Positions 36,001 through 63,000 of a DNA stretch of 64,000 nucleotides are shown here, piece by piece. Each line of letters starts with the position of its first letter. Position 1 is the first letter of the stretch. A program made the translations under genes and the position numbers. The DNA lies in the NCBI RefSeq assembly GCF_000002075.1, contig NW_004797483.1, positions 627,144 through 691,143 on the forward strand, in the 5' to 3' direction. A model generated the notes under the pieces. The model was not told the DNA's origin and did no database searches. It worked only from the letters and a program-made list of their open reading frames with translations. The DNA is from Aplysia californica. Taxonomy: Eukaryota.

Positions 36001-39000
36001 TTCCCCCCCCCAACATTAATGAAAATTCTTGAAGTTTCACAGGGAGCATGCTGGAATTAAGCCAATACCTGAACCTTCAAGGACTTATTGTTTCTCACAT
36101 TGTCATGTCGTTAATAATCAGCTTTTGACTTACCATTATCTAATAATATAAAATGTGCTGTTATTTTGTTTGCACTATCTGTATTGATACGCTGAATTGC
36201 TTTATTAGTTTTATTTATTTAGTTGAGGTTTTACGGCGCTCGTAACTCCATTAAGTCATATGANNNNNNNNNNNNNNNNNNNNNNNNNNNNNNNNNNNNN
36301 NNNNNNNNNNNNNNNNNNNNNNNNNNNNNNNNNNNNNNNNNNNNNNNNNNNNNNNNNNNNNNNNNNNNNNNNNNNNNNNNNNNNNNNNNNNNNNNNNNNN
36401 NNNNNNNNNNNNNNNNNNNNNNNNNNNNNNNNNNNNNNNNNNNNNNNNNNNNNNNNNNNNNNNNNNNNNNNNNNNNNNNNNNNNNNNNNNNNNNNNNNNN
36501 NNNNCTTTCTCCGACTCTCTCCCTCTCCCCATCCCTCTCCCTCCTCCTGGAAGCAGTTATCCTGCTGAATTTGTTTCCAAGATTTTGCATCCTTCTCAAT
36601 CTCAAACAGGTTCATAGGTGGTGCTGGCCAAAGCTCTAGCCATGTGTCGGAGGGGCTTAGTACAGCATTACAGTGTTTGGATGAGATTAAACAGCTCAGA
36701 TATTCAGGGTAAGAAATAGAAAAAGCTTAAGGTCATTTGTTTGGTATCAATAATTCATATTTTCATTGTGGGCTTTAAAAAAAAAAAGAATCGAAACAAT
36801 TTTTTTTCAATACATCTTTCTGCACAAGTATAATTACTTTCTCCCTCCTACTCTCTCTCTCTTTCTCTCCCCCCCTCCCCCTTTGTTTTTAAAATTTTTC
36901 GCTCACAAACGCACTGACAGTCCCATTGTAGGAGGTTGGCAGGTGCTCTGGTGTGGTTTGCTTCTTCTTTCCAATGAAACATCTATCGTCCTTTTCTCCC
37001 CTTCTTCTTTTTTATGTTTGTTACTCTCATGTAGCACCTCTAATCTTCTAGCGCTCATAATACCGTATGCAGTTGCAAGCGCCGTAAAACTTCTACTAAA
37101 ACTTTTTAAAAACAGTCCCATTACCTGAAATACCTCACCAACTCTTCTCTTAAGTCTTCAACAAGAACAAGTACGCATTGTTTATTCTTCACTGATTTAC
37201 TCAACTTTTACTTTTAATGTTTCAATCCTACTATTAGTTTCTGTGTTTTACGTTTCCTGCTGTCTTCAAGCTTAAATCTTACATTCATTAAATAATAAAA
37301 AATCTTCAAAATTGGCCCTGAACTGTGGAAAGAAATCTCATGCTTCCTTTTATATTTTCATTTTCATTTGTTGTCCGTTGGGTTCTATCATAAACGTTTT
37401 TGGTTAGCCCAGTTGGTGTCATGTATGATCTTAATTCAAATTGTATATATATATAACAACTTTGATGATATGCTTTTGTTTCGTCCTTTATAGCAAGGCT
37501 CAAAATTAAAACGCTGTTTTAGTCATAGTTTGTGTGCGAGTATAAGGGGAAGTAACCAAGGATGACAAATGTTTGCTTGTATGAGTTGGTGTTTTCCTTG
37601 GTATAGTTGCCAAGTTCAAACTGTTGACACAAAGCTTGTTGTAATGGCCTGACAACCTAACCACAAGTTTCCATTCTATTTATTTTGCCCCTTTTTTTGC
37701 TTCCTCAATCAACTACAGTTTGGTTTCATATGAGGGGAATTTTACTTTCTTTGTTCCAAATACTATACTTATAATAAGGTTGCTCATTGGAGCCGTGATG
37801 GGGTCTTCTCTTTCTACTTCTTTACAGTGTGTCTATTTTTCCAGGATGTTTTTGTGTAATGTAGCATTTGTATTGCCACTTTCCACTGAACAGCAATTCA
37901 AATCAGCTGACACTATTTACAATTTACTGCTTCTTGTTATCGTGTCCCTTACTTGGAACAGCAAACCGAGTCAACGCCACTGCATCCTCATCTGCAACTC
38001 TCCTCCATACCACATAGTGGCAGAAGAAAGCCAGGACTATCGAGGTTACAACAGTGAACAACTGGCAAGCATGATGGGAAAGGTATAGAGTTGAATTTTT
38101 ATATGCAATACAGTCCAAATTGTACAAGATTGCCATCCATTGTCGAGGAGAAAAGTGGTTGTCTCAGACAGGTGTGGTTGTCTTGGAAAGTGTCATTATA
38201 ATAAAGAAAAAAGCCAGCAAGATGGAAAGCAGTCATTTGCACTCTTGCGATTGTCTTGGATAAGTAGCCATAACAGAAGATTTGACTGAAATATATATGG
38301 TCCTGATTGTAGAATTCTAAACCTTAGCTGCTTTGTTAATCTCTCTCTTTTATGTGGTGATTCTACATTTACTGTGACCATGTCTTTTGTTATTATGACA
38401 ATTTCCACTACTTACTCTAAAATAATTTTAGTTGGAGTTTCCAGGAAAGGCATTGAAAAGTCTAAAAAACTTCTTGATATTCTGTTTAAAATAGTTTATT
38501 TGTTGATAGCTAAGCAATAACTATCAGGAAATATATTAAACACTTTCTGTTCTGATCTTTGCTCCAAGTAATGTTCTTGCAAGCAATGTGAGTTGCTAAA
38601 ATAAGAAACAAAGGGTTTAAATACTTAAAAAGCATCATTGCTTGCTTTTTGATATGGTTGAAATACAGACCACAGGATGAATAAAGTAAGACTTATGTGT
38701 ACTGTATGTTCTTTGGTATTCCATTTTGTCTGGGATTTTAGTGTTTTCTGTCAGAGAGGTATTGTTTTTTAACAGTATTTCATTTTTGTAACCATGGATA
38801 GATCGTCTACAGAATTTATCTCTGTTAGTTCTAAATATGACCTCTCTTTTTTTGCTCTAGAGAGGAGTGCATCTGTCGATTATTTCCCCTCGTAAGATTC
38901 CAGCACTCCAGAAACTTTTCAATGAGGTATGACTTTTCTTTTCATTTCTTCTTTATTCTTGTGTTTGATGTAATTGTGTCTTTTTTGTTGAAATGCTTTT

Positions 39001-48000: not shown

Positions 48001-51000
48001 TAGTTCCATAGAATTATAGTTTATTTGTACTTTTTAGGATTATGTTTTTGTGTATATTTTAGAATTGTGTTTCAGTTAGTATTTAATTTATGTTTAATAT
48101 ATCTTACTTGCATATTATGTTTCTGTACATTTTAAAAACTTATGATTATTTGGCTCATATCTTGATATTACTGTTTTGGCTGCATGCGAGCAAATTATGC
48201 TGTTTACTCTGCCCTGATTTGCGTGAAACTTACTCTGTCTGCAGCGCCAGCAGCAGCCTCCTCAAGATGCCAACATGATCAGTGAGTAATGAATATACCA
48301 TGTGTGTGTATGTGTATTTGTGTTTGAGTCTGTGCATTCACCCTTCAAATTATGAGTGATGGACAAACTCTCTGGTATGTTTTGTTCCTTCTCCCCTTTC
48401 CATCATATATTATCCTATTATCTCTCCTCCTTATCTTTGTATGTTCCTACCTTTAATCGTCTGCACTTATGTGACTTATTTGTGTTGCAGATGCTCTTAC
48501 AAAAAACGAAAGTGGGTGGTTGGTGGTTGCTCTGGTGTGGTTTGCTCCTTCTTTCCTATCAAACATCCATGGTCCTGATCTCTCCTTCTTTTTTGTGTTT
48601 GTTACTCGTTTGTAACACCTCTAATCTTCAGCACTTATTTGACTTTATTGTATTGCAAGTGCAGTAAAACTCTTTCTAAAACTAAAAAATTGGAATGAAA
48701 TCATCCTTCAAATAAATTATCGTATCTTGTATACTATTGAATTGGAAAAGGTTGAGAAAAGATGTTTTGATGTCGGGTTGTTGGGGGGGTTTTTTGTTAT
48801 TGTTTTCTTCCCCATCATCTAAAATAAATTTTGAAGCTCCATGTCAGGAGGTGAAACTGTAAATGTTATTTGAATCCTTCCCCCGTCCCCCATGCCTTTT
48901 TTTGTTGTTGCTGTTTTTGTTAGGTTTTTTGCTTTTGTTTTATTTTGTTACGGGTTGTTCACACCTTGTTTTGTCCGCGCAGTGCGTCAGCCGGGCATGG
49001 CAGGCAACCAAGCCATGATGAACATGCAGCCACAAGGCTCGGTGGGAATGTCCACCCCAGGGGCCATGATCAACCCACAGATGGCACAGCAGGCAGTGCC
49101 AAACTCTCAGGTACGCCTTTACCTTTCAATGTTCGTTCACCGTTCATTCAAGACTTCAACCCTTGTTTAGGCATCAGCTACATCCCTCGTGCTGATTTGT
49201 TGATATATTTGGATTTATTTCGTTTCGAAGCGAGGGGAGTGCATTTGGGTTTTTTAAAGTTTTTGTATGGGGATAATGAACTCGTACAAAAATTTAGCCT
49301 TTTCTTTGCCATGAGAATGATTTTTTAAAAATTGGTTTGGCAGCAGACTACTGGCTAATTGCCTTGAAAATGAAGTAAGGTATACAATCGTGTAACTTGA
49401 TAAAAGTGTTCTAGACTTCAACATAATCTCAAACACTGTAAATCTGAGAATTTCTTGCTACATCGTTCGTCTGTAAACTTTCTTGTTAAATATCTGTTGT
49501 GGGGTTAATTATTGGTTAAAAATTCTAACTGTGTGTTTTAAAAAAAATATTTTGAGCCTTTATAGGTAGCTTCAAGACTGAAAAGTACCAAATAAATCAA
49601 ATCTGGACCTGTTCTGTAAAATTTAGTCTTGGTAATGTCAGCGGTTTCTGTTTCACACCATTTCACACCACTGTCCTCTGACCAAGTAGTCTTCTGGTTG
49701 CTAGGTTGACAGTTTTGGCAGCTTATGTTCTCCTGCTGTCGTGCCTTTCTAATCTTTTCAGTGTGACTTAGGTTATCTACTTTATTTTGGCTGATTGCTT
49801 CCTTCCTTTCGTCTTGGATGTTTTGTTTGGTTTTATTTATTTTTGGTTGGTTGTGATTGTTTCATGGCTTAGAAGGGAAGAAATTTATAACAAGAAAAAC
49901 ACGTTCATCTCATAAATCTGTCTCTGGTCTTATGGCATTTGCCACGTTGTAGCTTTTTGCCCTCCGTGTTAAAGTATCTGATCAGTTCACGAATAGGAAA
50001 ATGTGTAGAGGAATAAGTAGATACCAGTTTCTACTTTGGTTCCTCTCGAATGGAACAGTCTTTTTGAGACATTCAAGGTTTTCAGGGGGGGAAAAAGGGA
50101 CTTGCAAAGCAACAAATGCCCTCAATTTATGTGTAGCATTTGTTCCTCTTTCTTAGAAGTTGCTTGGTGTGAAGTTTTCGTTGCGTGTATTGTCGGAGAG
50201 ATGCCTTCGTTAATTGGCTCTATAGGACAGCATGGAAGTTATGGGGTTAAACACTGTGTGTTACTAGATCGATGTCAGTAACGACAAGGAATGAAAGAAA
50301 ATTGATCTTATCTTTGTGCCCATACAATACAAAGTCAGTTCTGCAAGGCAATATTCATATACAGAGTGATAAAAAAACAACTGTACCACTTTTTTTCTGA
50401 ATATCTCGCACAAAAATTGTTCTAGAATGCTGTAATTTCGAACAAACATAGAATTCATTTAAAAGGAATTTGTTTGACATAAAATCTGCGAAGAAGAAAC
50501 TTGTTTTGAAAACAGAAATGACTTAAGAAAAAGCGACCATAAACGCAAAGCTCACCAATTTTTTAAAATCTTGTAAAGAAAGTCGTGAAAAGATTGGTTG
50601 GATTTTTTCTTTATTTTCTCTTTGACTTCTAATTTTCCATCTCTGTCACACTTAAACAATATTTAATTTCTTTTACAGAGTTAAAAAGAATAACGATTTC
50701 ATTCTGAAATTCCTAGAAGCAGTGGTTTACCTGCCCTCCTTTTGACTCGACACATTTTTAACGCGTCGTTCGAAATGTTCAATGTCGCCTAAACACATGG
50801 ACCTACTAAACCATGAGTGTTTAAAGCCACAAACACTGTACATATTCAGTATGAAGTGGCTTCTAGAGACAATAGGGAGTGGGGTGTCCAATAAGACAGC
50901 ATTTTGGGAGTTAACATATCCCACAGGGTGAAAATGGACTTTTCACTAAACCAGATGTCATCGAAGAAATGTTCCCGCTTTTCAAGACAATCGAGGGATC

Positions 51001-54000
51001 ATGAACACGTTGCCATGCTCTGATCCATGTCATCTCGGCCTAGGGAAGATGAAAGTGTTACAGTCATGAGTTAAGATCTGCCATGAGAATGCAGCCTGTT
51101 GAGTGTATGAAAGTCCTAGCTGCAGATCGTCTACAGACAGACTACTGAAATCTGCACCCTCGTGACATTTATAGGGCTGTGCATGGTGCGTGTTTGAAGT
51201 GGTGATTCTTTAGGAAATTTTTAGTTCTGATTCGCTGTAGATCCAAACTGAAGGAACTTTTCTACTTGTGACACCAAAGGTCTTGAGGGCACCTAAGCAT
51301 TCTCTCCATGCCGTGCGCAGAACTTACAAAATGTCAAGGACAGTGAGTTTTGTGGAGAGGTGATGTTCAATGCAAAAAGCTCTCTGCTCTTTACTAAACA
51401 TAACCATTATCTCAGCTTGCAAACAAAATTTGGGGAAAATAATATCTGCTGACTTCTATTGATTTGTTAGACTGCTGTAGCTTGCAATTTGGTGTGATTG
51501 TTGCAACTTTTAGTGCTAGGCCTAATGCGAACTGGTGCGTCATGCTATGAAAATGGCGACAAGGTGGGAAATGGTTTTCTTTTAATGCGCCGTATAGAGC
51601 AAAATCATTCAATGGACATATCTAAAATGAATATCAGGCAAATTCCTTTTGGCTTTCAAATGTTTTGTTCAAATCTGAAACGCAAAACTTCAGTATGGAG
51701 GAAGATATTTACTAAACAAGGTGCACAGATTTATTTTGGGATCACCCTGTATTTTCTTTTGCTTTTTGGTGTCCAGATTTAGCACTCTTTGGAGTCCCTT
51801 CCATGAGCAGGCTATAACATCATCTCATAATTTGCTAGATTACAGTGCAAACAACTGTAGTTCAAGTCATTGACATGCCTTTTTAAATTTGAGTTTGAGA
51901 AATTTTCCGTCTGCACTCTCAGCTTTGTCAATTTGTGCCTCATATTTTTATTAACCTCACCGAAATATAACAGAATGGATCATACTAGACAATGCTGTGT
52001 GCCGTCAATGGAACGCATTCTTTTATAGCTGTACAGTTGGTGTGTTGCATGACTGGTGTGTGAGCCCTCATCCCCGTCTAGGATTCCTCTGTTCTGACTG
52101 TTTTAGCATGTATGTACTAGTGGCTCAGGTTTAGTTACATTGTGCATAATTATGTCACGTTGCCAGTTAGGGTTTTGGATGGAAGCCTGGGAAAGACCTT
52201 TGTTTTGTATGCCAGTAGCGTAGTCTTGAGAATTTCTGATAAGGTGATTTTATCCTTTTTTCTCGCTATGGCCTGATTGGCCCCACATACTATCATCATA
52301 GGACATAAAATAAACACCCACATAGTGTATGTTCCCCCCCCATGATGAATTAGTGATGTGCCAGGTTTTCTTTGTGAATTGGATAACAACAAGGAATGAT
52401 TGCCAGTTGGGTTTTTTTGGTCCATGCTTGCAGAATCATGGGGTGGGCAGCCAGGGAATTCTCTTATCTTCCCTAGTTTACATGCTCTTTTGTCCTAATT
52501 TTAGAGTACCTTCTCTGATGTACTGTTCATGTTTGTATTTATGATTTTAACGTAAAACCAGTCTCTACAGCTCTGTCAGAGCTTGATGTGAGTGTTTGGA
52601 GGGCACCACAAGAAAGCCCTATTTCTTTTCTTTCACTCAGTTTTTCCTCTCTTATCTGTCTTGTTTTTTCCCCTGTGCTAGATGGTTACTATGGAGTTGA
52701 TGTGCTTCTCTTTACTCAAAGAGCCTCCTAATTTATCTAATCTAAATTGTATAGATAAGGGCATGAACCCCCTACAAGAAAAAAAGGAAGTTTCTTGTGA
52801 TAATAATAATATATGGACTTTTAACTGTGGTGACCTGTTGTAAGCCTCCACTTTGATTTGTTCCGCTTTCTTGCTTCAAGAGCTCGCACCAGGAAAATAA
52901 TGAGTAGCGTTTTTAAAATTTGTTATCAGTTCTGATTTGCATTGTACTGTCATGTTTGATATTAGACTGCCTTTTGGCTATTTGGATTCAACCTCGTTAG
53001 CTTGTTTTTTTTTACATTGTTTTTTTCCTCCAATTTTTTCCCTTTATAACCAGTTGAGTTTATTTTTCCTAGTTAGACTTGCATGTTTTCTGGAGTTTAC
53101 CATGCATTCCGTTGTGTTTTGCTTTGTTTTATAATTTCCCCCCAACCTGGGCCCCCCGTGTTTTGTTTCACTACTAGGCTAACTTGCTGAGCTCACAGGC
53201 TATGGCTAACATGCAGCCTGGAGCCCCGCAGAACCCTGCCATGATGGCAATGGGCATGCCACAGAACCCGGCCATGATGCAAACGGGAGTCCCGCAAAAC
53301 CCCAGCATGATGCAGGCCGGCGGGCCCCAGCCACCGCAAAACCCGGCCATGATGCAGGCTGGTGGGCCATCGCAAAACCCGGCCATGATACAAACCAGCG
53401 GCCCGCAAAATCCTCCTGGCATGATGCCTCCGTCGGCCGGGGTGATGGGCATGTCGCAGCAGCAGGGCCAGCAGCCTGCCCAGACGCCGCAGTCGCAACA
53501 GCAACAGCAGTTCCCGCCGCAGCAGGTGCTGTCTACTCTCTCTGTGTCTTCACGTGTCAACAGACAGACAGATACGACTCATGCACCGACTCACTCTGTC
53601 CACGCTTCCCGGCCTCTTCCTCTTCTCCTGTCTGGGATTGATCGCTTGAATGAAAAAGGTCTCCCTCACCCTTTACTACCCCCAACACTACCCCTCACAT
53701 ACAACCTCACCCCCTCTCCCCCCTCCATCCCCCAACACCTAGCTAGATACATCACTGTTTCAAGTGTCCCACCATCCGTCCTTCCTCCTCCTCTCTCAGG
53801 CATCAAGAGCGATTATCTGACATAATTCTATAGTCACCTCCCACCACAGTTGTGATCTTCTCTTTATTAACCTGTCAATGTTTTGCAACATTGCTAGAAA
53901 ATCACATCTGTGAATGATTTGCTTGACACCAATGTCACCATCCCTCCCTGTTCTGTGTGTTAACCCCAATTTGGTTTGTTTTTGGTTTGGGGTTTTTGTT

Positions 54001-57000
54001 TTTTTGTGCTTTTTTTTTCCTTCAGTTTGTTCTTATGTATGCTTTTCAGTGTCAGAAATTTGATGTTTATGTAGCAGATTTGTCTGTTAGACTTTTAGTG
54101 TGTAGACATAATTGTTATCAAAACAGTACAAAGCATCTTCGCATTGTGGAAGAAAGGGGCGTATGTGTGGAAAATGTGAATGTAATGTGCCGCAGACAGT
54201 GGGCTGCAACTTTCTCATGCTCACACAGGGTACTGTTTCTCACATTGGATCAAAGAGCACATCATGATGTGTTCGTTTTTGCCAAACGTAGCTGTTTACG
54301 TGCTTTTAGTAGAGGTTTTGAGAATGGTTTCGTCATATTGTCTCTGTCTGATGATGTCTTCCCTCTGTGCTTTCTCTCTGTCTGTCTTGATTTTCTCCTG
54401 TAGTAATTATTGCTATGTTGATGTACTTCTTGACCTGAACAAACTGTGTCCTTTCTCAAATCTCTTTGTCACTTGACTTTTTCCTCGTCTCTTTTTCTCT
54501 CAGAAAGCCCACTTACACTAACTGTCCATTTATTATAAGAAAGTGCTGAAGAAATGACACAAATCTGAAATGCAAAACTTCAGTATGGAGGAAGATATTT
54601 ACTAAACAAGGTGCACAGATTTTTTTTGGGATCACCCTGTATTTTCTTTTGCTTTTTGGTGTCCAGATTTAGCACTCTTTGGAGTCCCTTCCATGAGCAG
54701 GCTATAACATCATCTCATAATTTGCTAGATTACAGTGCAAACAACTGTAGTTCAAGTCATTGACATGCCTTTTTAAATTTGAGTTTGAGAAATTTTCCGT
54801 CTGCACTCTCAGCTTTGTCAATTTGTGCCTCATATTTTTATTAACCTCACCGAAATATAACAGAATGGATCATACTAGACAATGCTGTGTGCCGTCAATG
54901 GAACGCATTCTTTTATAGCTGTACAGTTGGTGTGTTGCATGACTGGTGTGTGAGCCCTCATCCCCGTCTAGGATTCCTCTGTTCTGACTGTTTTAGCATG
55001 TATGTACTAGTGGCTCAGGTTTAGTTACATTGTGCATAATTATGTCACGTTGCCAGTTAGGGTTTTGGATGGAAGCCTGGGAAAGACCTTTGTTTTGTAT
55101 GCCAGTAGCGTAGTCTTGAGAATTTCTGATAAGGTGATTTTATCCTTTTTTCTCGCTATGGCCTGATTGGCCCCACATACTATCATCATAGGACATAAAA
55201 TAAACACCCACATAGTGTATGTTCCCCCCCCATGATGAATTAGTGATGTGCCAGGTTTTCTTTGTGAATTGGATAACAACAAGGAATGATTGCCAGTTGG
55301 GTTTTTTTGGTCCATGCTTGCAGAATCATGGGGTGGGCAGCCAGGGAATTCTCTTATCTTCCCTAGTTTACATGCTCTTTTGTCCTAATTTTAGAGTACC
55401 TTCTCTGATGTACTGTTCATGTTTGTATTTATGATTTTAACGTAAAACCAGTCTCTACAGCTCTGTCAGAGCTTGATGTGAGTGTTTGGAGGGCACCACA
55501 AGAAAGCCCTATTTCTTTTCTTTCACTCAGTTTTTCCTCTCTTATCTGTCTTGTTTTTTCCCCTGTGCTAGATGGTTACTATGGAGTTGATGTGCTTCTC
55601 TTTACTCAAAGAGCCTCCTAATTTATCTAATCTAAATTGTATAGATAAGGGCATGAACCCCCTACAAGAAAAAAAGGAAGTTTCTTGTGATAATAATAAT
55701 ATATGGACTTTTAACTGTGGTGACCTGTTGTAAGCCTCCACTTTGATTTGTTCCGCTTTCTTGCTTCAAGAGCTCGCACCAGGAAAATAATGAGTAGCGT
55801 TTTTAAAATTTGTTATCAGTTCTGATTTGCATTGTACTGTCATGTTTGATATTAGACTGCCTTTTGGCTATTTGGATTCAACCTCGTTAGCTTGTTTTTT
55901 TTTACATTGTTTTTTTCCTCCAATTTTTTCCCTTTATAACCAGTTGAGTTTATTTTTCCTAGTTAGACTTGCATGTTTTCTGGAGTTTACCATGCATTCC
56001 GTTGTGTTTTGCTTTGTTTTATAATTTCCCCCCAACCTGGGCCCCCCGTGTTTTGTTTCACTACTAGGCTAACTTGCTGAGCTCACAGGCTATGGCTAAC
56101 ATGCAGCCTGGAGCCCCGCAGAACCCTGCCATGATGGCAATGGGCATGCCACAGAACCCGGCCATGATGCAAACGGGAGTCCCGCAAAACCCCAGCATGA
56201 TGCAGGCCGGCGGGCCCCAGCCGCCGCAAAACCCGGCCATGATGCAGGCTGGTGGGCCATCGCAAAACCCGGCCATGATACAAACCAGCGGCCCGCAAAA
56301 TCCTCCTGGCATGATGCCTCCGTCGGCCGGGGTGATGGGCATGTCGCAGCAGCAGGGCCAGCAGCCTGCCCAGACGCCGCAGTCGCAACAGCAACAGCAG
56401 TTCCCGCCGCAGCAGGTGCTGTCTACTCTCTCTGTGTCTTCACGTGTCAACAGACAGACAGATACGACTCATGCACCGACTCACTCTGTCCACGCTTCCC
56501 GGCCTCTTCCTCTTCTCCTGTCTGGGATTGATCGCTTGAATGAAAAAGGTCTCCCTCACCCTTTACTACCCCCAACACTACCCCTCACATACAACCTCAC
56601 CCCCTCTCCCCCCTCCATCCCCCAACACCTAGCTAGATACATCACTGTTTCAAGTGTCCCACCATCCGTCCTTCCTCCTCCTCTCTCAGGCATCAAGAGC
56701 GATTATCTGACATAATTCTATAGTCACCTCCCACCACAGTTGTGATCTTCTCTTTATTAACCTGTCAATGTTTTGCAACATTGCTAGAAAATCACATCTG
56801 TGAATGATTTGCTTGACACCAATGTCACCATCCCTCCCTGTTCTGTGTGTTAACCCCTGTTTGGTTTGTTTTTGGTTTGGGGTTTTTGTTTTTTTGTGCT
56901 TTTTTTTTTTCAGTTTGTTCTTATGTATGCTTTTCAGTGTCAGAAATTTGATGTTTATGTAGCAGATTTGTCTGTTAGACTTTTAGTGTGTAGACATAAT

Positions 57001-60000
57001 TGTTATCAAAACAGTACAAAGCATCTTCGCATTGTGGAAGAAAAGGGCGTATGTGTGGAAAATGTGATTGTAATGTGCCGCAGACAGTGGGCTGCAACTT
57101 TCTCATGCTCACACAGGGTACTGTTTCTCACATTGGATCAAAGAGCACATCATGATGTGTTCGTTTTTGCCAAACGTAGCTGTTTACGTGCTTTTAGTAG
57201 AGGTTTTGAGAATGGTTTCGTCATATTGTCTCTGTCTGATGATGTCTTCCCTCTGTGCTTTCTCTCTGTCTGTCTTGATTTTCTCCTGTAGTAATTATTG
57301 CTATGTTGATGTACTTCTTGACATGAACAAACTGTGTCCTTTCTCAAATCTCTTTGTCACTTGACTTTTTCCTCCTCTCTTTTTCTCTCAGAAAGCCCAC
57401 TAACACTAACTGTCCATTTATTATAAGAAAGTGCTGAAGAAATGACATACCGCTGATAAAAACACTTTCTTAAGCTGAAAGGCTTCCGGCATAAAACAGA
57501 TGAAAATCCTCAGGTCACAGTATTCAGTAATTTACAGATAGAGCTCAAACTGAAAGTTTACCCCCCCCCCCCCCCGCGGTGGTGCTACTGACTGAAATGT
57601 CTTTAGGCCATTCTCAAAGGGGGGACATTAACATGTTCTTTTGAGCAGTAGAATTGTAAACGGGCTGATTCATCAATGTCATGCTCCTAACTGTTCCTGA
57701 ACTGCTGCTTTTTCTTTCCTAGTCCTTACTATCATCTTTTTTTCCTCTACTTCTTTTGTATGTTTGTCACCCTCTTGCGACCCGCTATTTCCAGGGTGGG
57801 GTGCCTTGATAGTTTGTGCTGTTGAAGCTTGAGAGGTGAGCAGAATAAGCCATATTCCCTTTATGGACTGCTCTGTTGACATCCACCCTTGGCGCTCGTA
57901 TGACCATATGCAGTTGCGAGGCGCCCTAAAAACTCTACTAAAACTTAAAAACTAAAAACTTAAAATTACTGAGTACTATGGCAGGTGACTTGGGGATTCT
58001 CATGCTGTTGTCCCCATTTGTGTATCTTTATGTTTTCTTGAAAGGACATTAAGTTCAACATGTACTACTGGTATTTTGTTTCGCTCTTGGCTATCATTTT
58101 TGTTTTTAAGGTGTCGAAGCTCAGTTTTTCTTGACAAAAGTCTATTCTACTTCTTGTTTCTTGCCCTTTTGTTTCTTGCCTTTTAACATTTGTGTAATTA
58201 TCCTGTGTTACATTTATTGTTTCATTTATGGATTTGTTTTTACTAATCAGTGGATGATTGGAGTTCGAGGTAGCTACTGGTGGATCCTACTTTTTGTCTC
58301 TCTGTCTATTGTTTCTGCTGATGTCTTTTTTCCCCCCTGCGCTATATTACCGTTACTGTGTCAATGTGCTTATCTTTACTCAAACTCAGACTTTACTACT
58401 CAGTGATTGTATTTAGTTCTCTCTCTATAAATAAGATGGTGGGTGGCTGGCAGGTGCTCTAGTGTAGTTTGCTCCTTCTTTCCTATCATATATGTATCGT
58501 CCGTATCTCTTATTTTGTTCTTTGTATGCTGCTCTTCAGTAACACTTGTAATTGTCAGCACTTATATGACCGTTTTATGTTGGAAGAGCTGTTAAACTTA
58601 TCGTCTCACTCTCTGTATATAAGATGTGCATTCTGTCTGCTAACATTTTTCATTTTGTCCTTTCCCCCATCCCCATCACCCCTAAAACTTATTATCTCTC
58701 TATATAAGATGTGCATTCGGTCTGCTAACATTTTTCATTTTCTTCTTCTCCCCTTCCCCTCCCCCCTATGGTCATGGTGTGTCCACCACAGCAGGGATAC
58801 ATGCCTGATGCACAGGGCATGGGTCAGCAGCACGGCCAGTTGCCCATGGTCCCTGGACCCAGGGAGAAAAGAGTCATATGGACAGGTTGGTTTCATTTCG
58901 CTACAGTACAATTACAGTTCTATGTGCTCAGTATCTAGTTTTGAGAAGTTTGAGGTAAAAAATGTTGAGTTTCTCACTATGTCCAGCTCTTTTGAATGCA
59001 ATTCTTTGAATATCTTGATAATGACTCTGAATAATCTTATGAGTTTGGCAGAGCAGATAGAACATTTGGTTTTGACCTCATGGTCTTAACAGCTCAAAAC
59101 GACCAAAAATGTCTGATAGAACTTTGTCATTCTGAGGTAGTGATTTGTCATCCATTTTAAACGCGCAGGTGGAATGGCAAAAGAATACTGGTGGGGAATG
59201 AAAGATATTAGTTGGCGTTCACGTCTAGCTACTTTTCTATGACTTACACAGATAAGCATAGTCAAATAGGTGGTGGGACTGTTTTCGGGAAAGTTCTTTT
59301 TCTAAACTTTCTTGCCTAAAACAACCGTTTTCCTAAAATATTTGTGGAATATTTTTTAGAATTATTTTATGCAAATGAGAAAACCAAATGTGTACAATGT
59401 TTCTGTGTGTCATGTTTCCCCATTGCCCTTTCCAGGCACCATGGAATATCAGGACCGTAATGCCCAGGCAGCGAATCAGCAAAATGTCAATTTCTTACTC
59501 AACTGCAATGTCTACATCGAGATGCAGGATGCTGACATGTAAGTTGCACTCCTGATAACTTCAAACCCTCTTTTTTCTTTTTCCCCCTTTAAATTTTCAT
59601 AATCGGTTTCCCCGAGCCTGATTTCCCTAATGACCTTCATTTTCATTTCCCGTTTTTTTCTTCCGTTTTCTTTTTTTTTTTTTTTACTTATGAGTTTGTG
59701 AGGCTATCTGTAGGCTTACTGCTGTTGTAGACCTTTCTGGAAACTAGAATTTTCTGAAATTTCAGTGCTCATGTGTCCTTAACTGTGAGATTTGTCGTAG
59801 CTTGTTTACTTTCCTTACTCTCTCATCATCCCCCCCCCCCTCCCCCGAGGGCAGTGCTACTGACTGAAGTTTCTTTAAGCCATTCCCAAAGGGGGGTATT
59901 AACATGTTCTTATCCGCAGTAGAATTGTAAATGGGCTGATTTATCAATGTCCTGTCATACAGTGCCGGAAAAACATAGGAGGAACTGCTGCTTTTTCTTT

Positions 60001-63000
60001 CCTCATCCTTACTATCGTCATTTTTCCTCCACTTCTTTTGAATGTTTGTCGCTCTATTGTGAACTTCTATTTCCGGGGTGCCTTGATAGTCGAAGCAGAC
60101 TGTGCAGTTGAGGCTTGAGAGGTGAGCAGAGTAAGCCTGATTCCCCGTTTAGACTTCTCTGTTGACATCCACCCCTTGGATATGACCTTATGCAGTTGCG
60201 AGCATTGTTAAACACCTACCTTATCACCCCTTGGCGCTCTTATGGCCTTATGAAGTTGCGAGCGCCGTAAAACCTTACTTACTAAACTAAAATTACTCTC
60301 TCAGGTCCACCTTAAGTGACCTTTCAGTGTTGAAAAGGGCACTCAACCAACCATATAGTACCTCAGCCCAACGAATTTTGTATTTCTTTTTGCTTTTCTC
60401 CTAACAGCAACACAGGAGACTGGCCACAGAAACTGACCATTCAGCTTTTGCCGCAGCGCATGTTGTCCAGTGTGCAGCACCTGTGCAAGAACTCGCGCCA
60501 GGTTTTGTTTCATTTTCCAGTCAACACCAGTCCCAACAATGAGGCACTTGGCAATCTCTACATGCTCATGAGCAATGGTTTCGTACGTATCCATGATCAT
60601 ATTTTAAGTTTTTACTACTTTTGTGTCCTTACAATTTGACCTTGGTCTGCGTGGGTTGGTCAGTTTGTACCACAGCTGGTGGAATGCTATTTTATAATTC
60701 AAAGATGCCAATTTTCCAAATAAATCGGGAAAGCTGGATTCCTAAAATAATGTGCCGTCTGATCGCCAAGAAAATAGTCCTGATACAGGATTTATTAGAC
60801 AAAATGATCCATAAATTTTGAATCTCTGCCCAAACATTTCCATGGCGTCCGAAAAACTCAGGATCTTTTTTGCGTTGCCAGATGACACCCCTGATAACCT
60901 GCTCACGATAGTACTATAGTGCTGCAGTGTTGAAAGGGGTGTTAGATCCGCAATGTACCATGGAGAGGTAGTTTCTTAGACACATCGCTAATTTTAACAT
61001 TTATTAACATTATTTGATTGATGGGTCCAAGCAAGGTTGCCTGGGGGAGGAACAGGGATCAGAAATAATCGATATCTTGAATTATCTTAAATACACTTTG
61101 TGCTCGACCAAAAATTAGAATGCCAAAATCCAGTTCTAAAGCTTATTATGAAGAGGCTGTTGCTTGATACAGTGCAGCAGGTCCTTAAGAGGGAACGGTT
61201 TCTTAAGCATTTGTTTGATAGAATATCACATTGTGTTTGTGTTAAAGAATGCAAGAAAGAATAATGCAAGTGTGAGCATAAGTTGGACTCTGGGACTTTT
61301 AATAGTCTGACTCACATTTGTTCCTTCTTTCCTATCAAACATCCGTCGTCCTTATCTCTCCTTCTTTATTGAGTTTGTTAGAACATTTTTTTGACTCACT
61401 GTTAGCTACACATACTCTTCTCATTTGGGAGTGCTGTGAAATTTGTTCTGGCTTTGTCCCTTGCAGGCAGGTTGCGTTCGCTTCCCGCCTCAGTCAGATA
61501 CCAAGATCATCTTGGTGATGTACAGCGGCAAGAAGAAGTCTCTAATCGGCCTCATCCCCAACGACCAGAACGGCATCATGAATGGCATCAAGAAAGTGGT
61601 AGCACACTACCGCTTGAAGGTGGGTCGAGAAAATCAGCTCTTTCTGCCTTTTGCAATGCTTGAGAAGGGGAGAGCGAGGAGGAAGGGGGGGGTGCAAAAT
61701 GTCAGTTATAACACAGTTCCAGTTCGTTAGGTCTCTTTTCATATAGAATTTTAATGAGAGTAATATATGATAAAATGTTTTTAATGTATACCTGCATGTG
61801 TTTTTACGGTCCTGTACTGCCAAGAAAAATTTCCCTCTGGGATAATAAAGTATTATCTTATCTAATCTTATAGCTCTGACTGAGAAGAAATGGTGACAGC
61901 CGAGTTCTGTCAGGAGTCAGAAATACACTTGCCATATTTAATGATTGACTATGGCATTTCTGTGGGTGACAAATAAATCAAAATTAAATGCTGTCCAATA
62001 TTGTTTAATGGGATGATGTGCGACTCCTAGTGTGTTGTAGCCCTAGAACTGTGTTGTAGAACAGGTAATTCTTCGTGAATATTTTCAACAGTGATGAAAT
62101 AGTGGATACGATTATTTAGGGCTTTCTCTTGTTGCGTTGTACCTCCACCATAAATGTATCGACCTTGCGTATACAGTCAAACCTGTGTAAAACGGCCACC
62201 CATTGTCATGGAGAAAATTGGCAGTATAAAACAGGTGGCCGTCTTCGGCGGGACTGATCAAAATGAAGAAAGCAAACTCTTCGGAGGTCCAAACAGGGGC
62301 TGAATTCTGGCTTTAGACTGCCGCAAGGATAATTCAAAAGGGTTTTTGTTTTCTTTTGATAAAGGGGTGTTGGTGGTGTGAGGAAGGTTTTTTGTGTTGC
62401 TGTTTTGTTGGTTTGTTTTTGTTTTTTGGGGTTAACTTTCTTTTTATTGATGATTTTGTGCAATGGTAAAATAGACTAAAAATTATTTAAGTAAGACGAT
62501 GAAGACCGAGTGCCATTGTGAAACAAACACACAGGTCGCCACCACTCGGAGAACAAGCGACACTTCTGGCACAAGTTCATATCAACGCCCATTGTTACTT
62601 TGTTACAGATTAGGTAAACAAAACAGTGACAAGTCGCCTCACACACGATATGTGCATGAGTTGTGGGCGAGCTTATAGGTTATGACGGATCATGCTACTC
62701 TCACTAGCAGTTGAAAATTTATTTCTAGGCTTTCCTATTGGTCAATTTGGGTAAACATTCATTGGAGGGACTAACAATAATGATAGGTGAATGAATTATG
62801 ACAGCCCGTCCACAGCGTCAGGGGCCAATTCAAAATTTTTGACAAAGCATCGGGCAGTGAGTGACCACGCTTGGCTGCCTGAGGCAGGTAAATTTGGCTG
62901 TTGGTTGATAAAATAAGGTGGCAGTGGCCACGTTGGACAGGTGACCGTTTTACACAAGTTAAATTATATAGAAAAAAGCGCAAGGGAGAAAATGGAAAGT

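What the first reader, a model, noticed from the sequence alone, without database searches (positions are those of the whole stretch)
51670..57447. 2.89-kb tandem duplication that doubles a frame-symmetric MED25 low-complexity exon
Seen: two head-to-tail copies with no N-gap at the junction. Each carries a complete 348-nt phase 0-0 exon with intact splice sites; the exon copies differ by one synonymous change. The ~10 differences cluster in the first ~65 bp and the last ~600 bp, leaving ~2.2 kb almost identical. Inference: if real, including both copies adds 116 aa in frame (6 to 12 PQNP repeats) to the disordered linker between the Mediator-anchoring VWA domain and the activator-binding ACID domain, giving a copy-number or splice-tunable linker. 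A false duplication of two haplotypes in a draft assembly is about equally plausible.
Basis: partly seen in the sequence, partly recalled or inferred. Interest (0 to 1): 0.75.

Follow-up and report, generated by a model that had tools for sequence, protein, structure and literature searches.

The report
False tandem duplication in MED25
The doubled 2.9-kb piece of the MED25 gene is really in the assembly text, but reads from three samples indicate that the animal has it once, so the doubled exon is most likely an assembly error.

Summary
Window 51670-54559 and 54560-57447 are abutting copies that differ by 10 substitutions and one 2-nt indel (99.6% identical), with no N at the junction. Each copy holds a 348-nt exon that is open in one frame only and has AG/GT splice sites. 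The exon copies differ by one synonymous change. The exon lies between the Med25_VWA and Med25 (ACID) exons.

The biological reading is not supported. Logan contigs are non-branching k=31 graph paths. In three DNA runs, including the likely source sample, they run from the end of the unit straight into the right flank. A real tandem junction would create a branch there, and none is seen. Word depth of the unit equals that of unrelated contigs (55.1 against 54.7 and 56.5 in X5). The alleles that separate copy 1 from copy 2 occur as mosaics in other individuals, so they are segregating SNPs of one locus. Copy 2 starts 85 nt inside a high-copy repeat, where short-read contigs tend to break. The same scaffold holds a 611-nt duplicate pair flanking a 100-N gap.

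Points against: the junction has no gap, I could not directly show that junction-spanning reads are absent, and the RNA data were too thin to test exon-to-exon splicing.

Verdict: false duplication of two alleles, about 0.9. Interest is low.

The parts
51670..54559 (+). Copy 1 of the 2.89-kb unit (2890 nt): end of an intron, the 348-nt exon, and the start of the next intron.
   Evidence: Its alleles at the late sites are the ones that the X1 contig carries straight into the right flank (record 8 and table 3).
54560..57447 (+). Copy 2 of the unit (2888 nt), continuous with the right flank.
   Evidence: X5 contig record 16 (3026 nt) covers 54581-57550 as a single path.
54559..54560 (.). The novel junction (end of unit joined to start of unit): no N and no microhomology. 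This is the suspected mis-join.
   Evidence: for the sequence. Of the 24 contig pieces listed out of 935, none bridges it. The listing is truncated, so absence is not proven.
53178..53525 (+). Q/P/M-rich 348-nt exon (116 aa, 6 QNP motifs), copy 1.
56068..56415 (+). The same exon, copy 2. One synonymous difference (G at 56223 against A at 53333).
50604..51753 (.). High-copy dispersed repeat of about 1.15 kb. The left breakpoint of the duplication (51670) lies inside it, about 85 nt from its end, so copy 2 starts with only the tail of the repeat.
   Evidence: (2401 first-look candidates; 43 scored matches elsewhere at 70-87% identity, most of them spanning query 5-1153), and (1445 candidates for the first ~85 nt of the unit).
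57558..57900 (.). Start of a second high-copy dispersed repeat, about 110-125 nt to the right of the duplication. Its right end was not mapped.
   Evidence: 7379 first-look candidates; matches start at query 459-489, which is window 57558-57588.
29907..38082 (+). Four exon-sized matches to Pfam Med25_VWA: 29907-30014, 35307-35441, 36605-36724 and 37963-38082.
   Evidence: with contig coordinates converted by subtracting 627143.
60400..61613 (+). Two exon-sized matches to Pfam Med25 (ACID domain): 60400-60588 and 61467-61613.

Best explanation
This is a false (heterotype) duplication in a gappy short-read draft scaffold. The animal has one copy of the 2.89-kb segment, which is the near-unique DNA between two high-copy repeats in a MED25 intron-exon-intron stretch. 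The assembly wrote two allelic versions of it one after the other. Version one arrives from the left flank and stops at 54559. Version two starts 85 nt inside the left repeat, where repeat-limited contigs begin, and continues into the right flank. The 12 differing positions are ordinary SNPs and an indel between the alleles. The second exon copy, and the 116 extra residues it would add, therefore do not exist in the gene. Shown: the duplication in the text, the absence of a graph branch at the unit's end in three samples, single-copy depth, the segregating alleles, and the breakpoint inside a repeat. Inferred: the assembler step that produced a gapless join.
For: (1): contigs cross 57447|57448 without a break in X1 (record 8, 56209-57550 plus 25 further letters), X5 (record 16, 54581-57550 plus 50 further letters) and X8 (record 24, 56736-57481, with 34 letters beyond the boundary). 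According to passages of the Logan preprint PMC12424806, contigs are non-branching paths of a k=31 de Bruijn graph after simplification. The last 43 nt of the two copies are identical, so a real tandem junction would give the unit's last 31-mer two successors and would end the contig there.

(2), table 8: mean word depth of the unit's contigs equals that of contigs that lie mostly elsewhere in the genome. In X5 it is 55.1 against 54.7 and 56.5. In X1 it is 16.3-18.7 against 14.5 and 23.6. In X8 it is 3.7-5.3 against 6.0 and 6.5. It is not doubled.

(3), table 3: the X1 contig that runs into the right flank carries the copy-1 allele at 56858, 56859, the indel, 57044, 57068, 57323, 57375 and 57402. 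X5 carries copy-1 alleles at 57068, 57323 and 57375 but copy-2 alleles at 56858/9, 57044 and 57402. X8 shows a third mix. The differences therefore segregate as alleles of one locus.

(4): the left breakpoint lies inside a dispersed repeat with at least 2401 candidate copies, 85 nt from its end. Logan contigs of X1 and X5 start at unit column 22, which shows that graph contigs do begin just there.

(5): the same scaffold has 64 N runs in 264 kb. It also has a 611-nt pair at 99.35% identity flanking a 100-N gap, which is the textbook unmerged contig-end overlap.

(6) Ko et al. 2022 (PMC9516828; passages read) list half depth per copy and haplotype-specific k-mers as marks of heterotype false duplications. 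They report that such duplications create false exon and gene gains.
Against: There is no N gap between the copies. Ko et al. list gaps between duplicates on the same scaffold as typical, and the other example in this scaffold does have one, so I cannot name the assembler step that made a gapless join.

One search lists only 24 of 935 laid pieces. A short junction contig of about 60 nt could be among those not shown, so the absence of junction reads is inferred from the missing branch and was not seen directly.

Contigs drop variants and are not phased, so the link between copy-1 alleles and the right flank rests on the graph path and not on single reads.

The depth baseline is two unrelated contigs per run, each touching a repeat.

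It is not certain that X1 is the individual that was assembled.
Confidence: 0.9

Rival explanations
1. This is a real, very young tandem duplication, fixed or polymorphic. A blunt non-homologous join duplicated the intron-exon-intron segment, giving MED25 two copies of a frame-symmetric exon. Splicing could then include one or both and lengthen the disordered linker by 116 aa.
For: The junction is gapless and clean. Both exon copies keep identical splice sites and an open frame. The exon length is a multiple of 3, so double inclusion would stay in frame. Identity of 99.6% is compatible with a recent event. The listing is truncated, so a short junction contig cannot be excluded.
Against: No branch appears at the unit's end in X1, X5 or X8, and the unit's word depth equals that of unrelated contigs (read with the Logan method passages). 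The alleles that tell the copies apart occur as mosaics on single paths in other individuals (table 3). The left breakpoint sits just inside the edge of a repeat. No transcript evidence exists: 9 RNA reads were laid, with a depth of 0.1-0.4 over the exon bins.
Confidence: 0.07
2. This is a false duplication of the homotype kind: one allele written twice, with the differences being sequencing or consensus errors at contig ends and not a second haplotype.
For: The differences lie close to the junction on both sides: the last ~600 nt of copy 1 and the first 64 nt of copy 2. That is where contig-end errors would fall.
Against: Both allele sets are seen in independent samples. Copy-1 alleles appear in X1, X5 and X8. 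Copy-2 alleles appear in X5 at 56858/9, 57044 and 57402, and in X8 at 57323 and 57375 (table 3). Only the T at 57068 was seen in none of the three runs.
Confidence: 0.03

Closest known systems
Heterotype false duplication in draft assemblies (Kelley & Salzberg 2010, PMC2864568, seen as search listing and abstract only; Ko et al. 2022, PMC9516828, passages read)
   Same: Two allelic versions of one locus lie side by side on one scaffold. Per-copy depth is half. The differences are haplotype variants. The result is a false gain of an exon.
   Different: There is no N gap between the copies, whereas Ko et al. list gaps as typical. The size is small (2.9 kb), and one end lies in a dispersed repeat.
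Gap-flanking contig-end overlap in the same scaffold (L038:49-659 and L038:764-1374)
   Same: A near-identical pair (99.35%, 4 mismatches in 611 nt) sits in tandem, and the second copy starts next to repetitive DNA, an (AG)n run.
   Different: That pair is separated by 100 N. The MED25 pair is joined directly.
Real tandem exon duplication that lengthens a protein or creates alternative exons (general knowledge, recalled, not searched)
   Same: A frame-symmetric exon with intact splice sites is present twice in one intron context.
   Different: The marks of a real duplication were not found here: no junction branch, no doubled depth, and no transcript joining the two exon copies.

Membership tests
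False heterotype duplication (assembly artefact; criteria from Ko et al. 2022) | Read or k-mer depth at the haploid level (half) per copy. | tested here: met
   word depth of the unit, counted once, equals that of unrelated contigs (X5 55.1 against 54.7/56.5; X1 16.3-18.7 against 14.5/23.6; X8 3.7-5.3 against 6.0/6.5). Two assembly copies therefore share single-copy depth. The measure is rough: contig means, with 2 baseline contigs per run.
False heterotype duplication (assembly artefact; criteria from Ko et al. 2022) | Haplotype-specific variants distinguish the copies. | tested here: met
   table 3: copy-1 and copy-2 alleles both occur in independent samples, in different combinations, each on a single contig path.
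False heterotype duplication (assembly artefact; criteria from Ko et al. 2022) | Assembly gap between the duplicates on the same scaffold. | tested here: not met
   there is no N at 54559|54560, and no N anywhere from 36505 to 64000. Ko et al. describe this as a typical feature, not a required one.
False heterotype duplication (assembly artefact; criteria from Ko et al. 2022) | Discordant read pairs or linked reads across the duplicates. | not testable with these tools
   Only Logan contigs were available for the DNA runs. No paired raw DNA reads were offered.
True tandem segmental duplication | Reads or graph edges that join the end of the unit to its start. | tested here: inconclusive
   none of the 24 listed pieces bridges 54559|54560, but 911 pieces are not shown. 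Indirectly the test is negative, because contigs pass from the unit's end into the right flank with no branch in 3 of 3 DNA runs.
True tandem segmental duplication | About twofold depth of the unit relative to single-copy DNA. | tested here: not met
   table 8: see the depths above.
MED25 gene (Mediator subunit 25) | Med25_VWA and Med25 (ACID) domains in that order on one strand. | tested here: met
   4 exon matches, best E 3.9e-8, all over the curated cut-off; 2 exon matches, E 1e-10 and 3.5e-8. These are the only matches in the genome for either family. Med25_SD1 (PF11235) gave no match.

The most novel reading that the evidence does not exclude
The duplication is real but polymorphic. It would be carried by the assembled individual and absent from the three samples examined, or lost from their contigs. 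Some animals would then express a MED25 whose disordered VWA-ACID linker is lengthened by 116 residues (12 QNP motifs instead of 6) or is spliced variably.
Probability: 0.07. Interest if true: 0.45.

Novelty: not a real feature. Interest (0 to 1): 0.08.

Why it matters
The main value is as a warning. An annotation pipeline run on this assembly could produce a MED25 model with a doubled low-complexity exon, or a spurious alternative exon, and comparative work could read that as lineage-specific linker expansion. This case lacks the usual N-gap flag, so gap-based screens for false duplications would miss it. If the duplication were real, it would be a modest example of in-frame exon doubling in a disordered Mediator linker.

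Tried and rejected
1. Orthologue comparison. I searched the 116-aa exon translation against 1.84 billion representatives by phmmer. It gave 4 hits at E <= 0.001, and none is MED25. Pfam shows LED_rpt/IMCp below cut-off, RING plus cyclophilin, Mucin-like, and VWD/C8. These are low-complexity matches, so nothing was learned about the linker in other species. The exon itself matches no Pfam family.

2. Independent assemblies of the locus through the look-up of encoding contigs.

3. Base rate of such duplicates. The base rate therefore rests on 264 kb, which holds 2 local duplicates at 97% identity or more over at least 200 nt.

4. RNA test of exon-to-exon splicing. X22 (raw polyA RNA-seq, about 90% of the run read) laid only 9 reads, 8 of them only partly. 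Five of them are poly-T-tailed reads at a T run near 54009-54022. No joint from 53525 to 56068 was listed, but the depth is too low for this to mean anything.

5. Earlier notes of this scan. Nothing is recorded near this place, and nothing matched the long word query. The query 'tandem duplication' listed 8 of 16 unchecked titles from other pieces of this genome about small splice-site-anchored duplications. I did not test them and they did not affect my reading.

6. NAHR origin rejected. The right flank does not repeat the start of the unit, and there is no third partial copy.

7. Single tiling rejected as evidence. The fact that contigs tile the unit only once says nothing by itself, because all 31-mers of a Logan accession are distinct by construction.

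8. Terminal inverted repeats in the left repeat: none found. Its ORFs of 60 aa or more are 3 short ones, and I did not search them.

9. Supplementary files of papers were neither needed nor opened.

10. As the operators required, I built no joined spliced model of MED25 and searched none. Exons were handled apart.
Full report
**The observation**

The window holds two abutting copies of a 2.89-kb unit, 51670-54559 and 54560-57447. They have 2890 aligned columns, 10 mismatches and one 2-nt indel, at 99.585% identity. The differences lie at unit columns 12, 64, 1664, 2299-2300, 2350-2351, 2487, 2511, 2766, 2818 and 2845. There is no N at the junction, and the last N run of the window ends at 36504. 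There is no microhomology at the junction: neither the left flank's end matches the unit's end, nor the right flank's start the unit's start.

In the whole 927-Mb, 4332-contig assembly, only these two places match the unit over its full length. Within the window it is the only duplicate above 93% identity.

Each copy carries a 348-nt exon, at 53178-53525 and 56068-56415. The exon is open only in frame 0, and both copies have the same AG acceptor and GT donor. The copies differ by one synonymous change (CCA/CCG at 53333/56223). The 116-aa product is Q/P/M-rich with 6 QNP motifs, 5 of them PQNP.

The gene is MED25. The only Med25_VWA matches in the genome lie at window 29907-38082. The only Med25 (ACID) matches lie at 60400-61613. 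All are on the + strand, with the doubled exon between them. I did not verify the exon number.

**Surroundings**

The left breakpoint is not in unique DNA. Window 50604-51753 is one copy of a dispersed repeat of about 1.15 kb. It has 2401 first-look candidates, and the scored copies are mostly 81-87% identical over nearly its whole length. Position 51670 lies about 85 nt before the repeat's end, so copy 2 begins with only the last 85 nt of that repeat.

A second high-copy repeat (7379 candidates) begins at about 57558-57588, some 110-140 nt to the right of the duplication. The unit is therefore essentially the unique DNA between two repeats, which is the piece a short-read graph assembler yields as one contig.

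The scaffold is a gappy draft. The 264 kb made of the window and the 200 kb upstream hold 64 N runs, totalling 59,987 N. That stretch contains exactly one other local near-identical duplicate: a 611-nt pair at 99.35% identity (4 mismatches) flanking a 100-N gap and starting at an (AG)n run. This is the classic sign of overlapping contig ends that the assembler failed to merge.

**Read evidence**

The look-up of sequencing runs listed 24 runs. I laid four of them on 51600-57550:
- X1: a 2011 run of sample S1, the best holder at 0.84 of the words, and possibly the source of the assembly.
- X5: a 2022 run from another sample and study.
- X8: a 2013 run from a third sample.
- X22: raw polyA RNA-seq reads from 2026.

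The three DNA runs are held as Logan contigs. According to passages of the Logan preprint (PMC12424806), these contigs are non-branching paths of a k=31 de Bruijn graph after simplification, and all 31-mers of an accession are distinct by construction. It follows that tiling the unit once proves nothing. It also follows that a contig cannot pass a real branch.

The last 43 nt of the two copies are identical. A real tandem junction would therefore give the unit's last 31-mer two successors, the unit's start and the right flank, and every contig would stop at 57447. Instead, contigs run through 57447|57448 in all 3 DNA runs:
- X1 record 8: 56209-57550, then on beyond the stretch.
- X5 record 16: 3026 nt, from unit column 22 to 50 nt beyond 57550, as one path.
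- X8 record 24: 56736-57481, with 34 letters beyond the boundary.

Depth agrees. The unit's contigs have the same mean word depth as contigs that lie mostly elsewhere and touch the stretch only through the repeat:

| Run | Unit's contigs | Unrelated contigs |
|---|---|---|
| X5 | 55.1 | 54.7, 56.5 |
| X1 | 16.3-18.7 | 14.5, 23.6 |
| X8 | 3.7-5.3 | 6.0, 6.5 |

This baseline is small (2 contigs per run) and touches repeats. It still shows no sign of a twofold excess.

**The differences are alleles**

The X1 contig that runs into the right flank carries the copy-1 state at all late sites: 56858, 56859, the indel, 57044, 57068, 57323, 57375 and 57402. It also carries two non-reference bases in the flank, at 57448 and 57492 (table 3).

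X5 has copy-1 states at 57068, 57323 and 57375 but copy-2 states at 56858/9, 57044 and 57402, plus private variants. X8 shows yet another mix.

The states that separate copy 1 from copy 2 therefore segregate in the population, in various combinations, on what each sample's graph treats as a single path. That fits two haplotypes of one locus. It does not fit consensus errors: both allele sets recur, and only the T at 57068 was seen in none of the three runs.

Contigs of X1 and X5 begin at unit column 22 (records 6 and 16). This shows that graph contigs do start just inside the repeat tail, about where copy 2 starts in the assembly.

**What the reads do not show**

The answer lists 24 of 935 laid pieces, and none of those 24 bridges 54559|54560. 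A junction contig could be as short as about 60 nt and sit among the unlisted pieces, so its absence is inferred from the missing branch and was not seen directly. Contigs are not phased and they drop variants, so the link between copy-1 alleles and the right flank is a graph path and not a read.

The RNA run gave 9 laid reads, 8 of them partial. Five are poly-T-tailed reads at a T run around 54009-54022, and depth over the exon bins was 0.1-0.4. The exon-to-exon splice could not be tested either way.

**Explanation**

The most likely account (about 0.9) is a heterotype false duplication. One contig came in from the left flank carrying one allele of the segment. A second contig carried the other allele, started inside the repeat tail, and ran on into the right flank. 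The two were placed one after the other instead of being merged.

This meets two criteria given by Ko et al. 2022 (PMC9516828, passages read): half depth per copy and haplotype-specific variants. It fails a third, typical criterion, a gap between the copies. I could not test the fourth, discordant read pairs.

The gapless join is the one feature I cannot explain. The assembler or gap-closing step behind it is unknown to me. Kelley & Salzberg 2010 (PMC2864568) describe the same class of error; I saw only the search listing and abstract.

**Rivals**

A real, young tandem duplication (about 0.07) would need one of two things. Either X1 is not the assembled individual and the duplication is absent from all three samples, or the graph simplification removed a junction edge that should have half the unit's depth.

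A homotype artefact, where the differences are errors (about 0.03), is contradicted by the recurrence of both allele sets.

**Dead ends**

- The exon peptide found no MED25 relative among 1.84 billion representatives. It gave 4 low-complexity hits.
- Earlier notes of the scan held nothing on this place.

**Verdict**

The MED25 linker is not doubled. Interest is low, apart from the point that this false duplication carries no N-gap flag and could mislead gene annotation.

Noticed in passing
L038:49-659 and L038:764-1374 (G000:C213:557192-557802 and 557907-558517): A 611-nt pair at 99.35% identity (4 mismatches, all within columns 84-90) flanks a 100-N gap and starts next to an (AG)n run. It looks like an unmerged contig-end overlap, i.e. 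another false duplication in the same scaffold.
   Followed up: partly
window 50604-51753: A dispersed repeat of about 1.15 kb with at least 2401 candidate copies in the genome, mostly 81-87% identical. No terminal inverted repeats were found, and it holds only 3 short ORFs of 60 aa or more. I did not classify it.
   Followed up: partly
window 57558-57900 and beyond: A second dispersed repeat family with at least 7379 first-look candidates at 78-84% identity. I did not map its extent or determine its class.
   Followed up: no
window 54009-54022: Five polyA-RNA-seq reads of X22 end here with long poly-T loose ends, and 4 of 6 reads show C>T at 54009. The site is next to a genomic T run inside the intron. 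This is probably low-complexity or internal-priming noise and not a transcript end.
   Followed up: no
G000:C213:427144-691143 (window plus L025-L044): 64 N runs totalling 59,987 of 264,000 bases (23%). Eleven of them are exactly 100 N and one is 13,676 N. This is a very gappy draft region, which lowers trust in any local structural feature.
   Followed up: yes
window 57448 and 57492: Contigs of X1 and X5 both read C where the assembly has T, in the right flank just after the duplication. With C at 57448, the flank would share its first 2 nt (CA) with the start of the unit.
   Followed up: no
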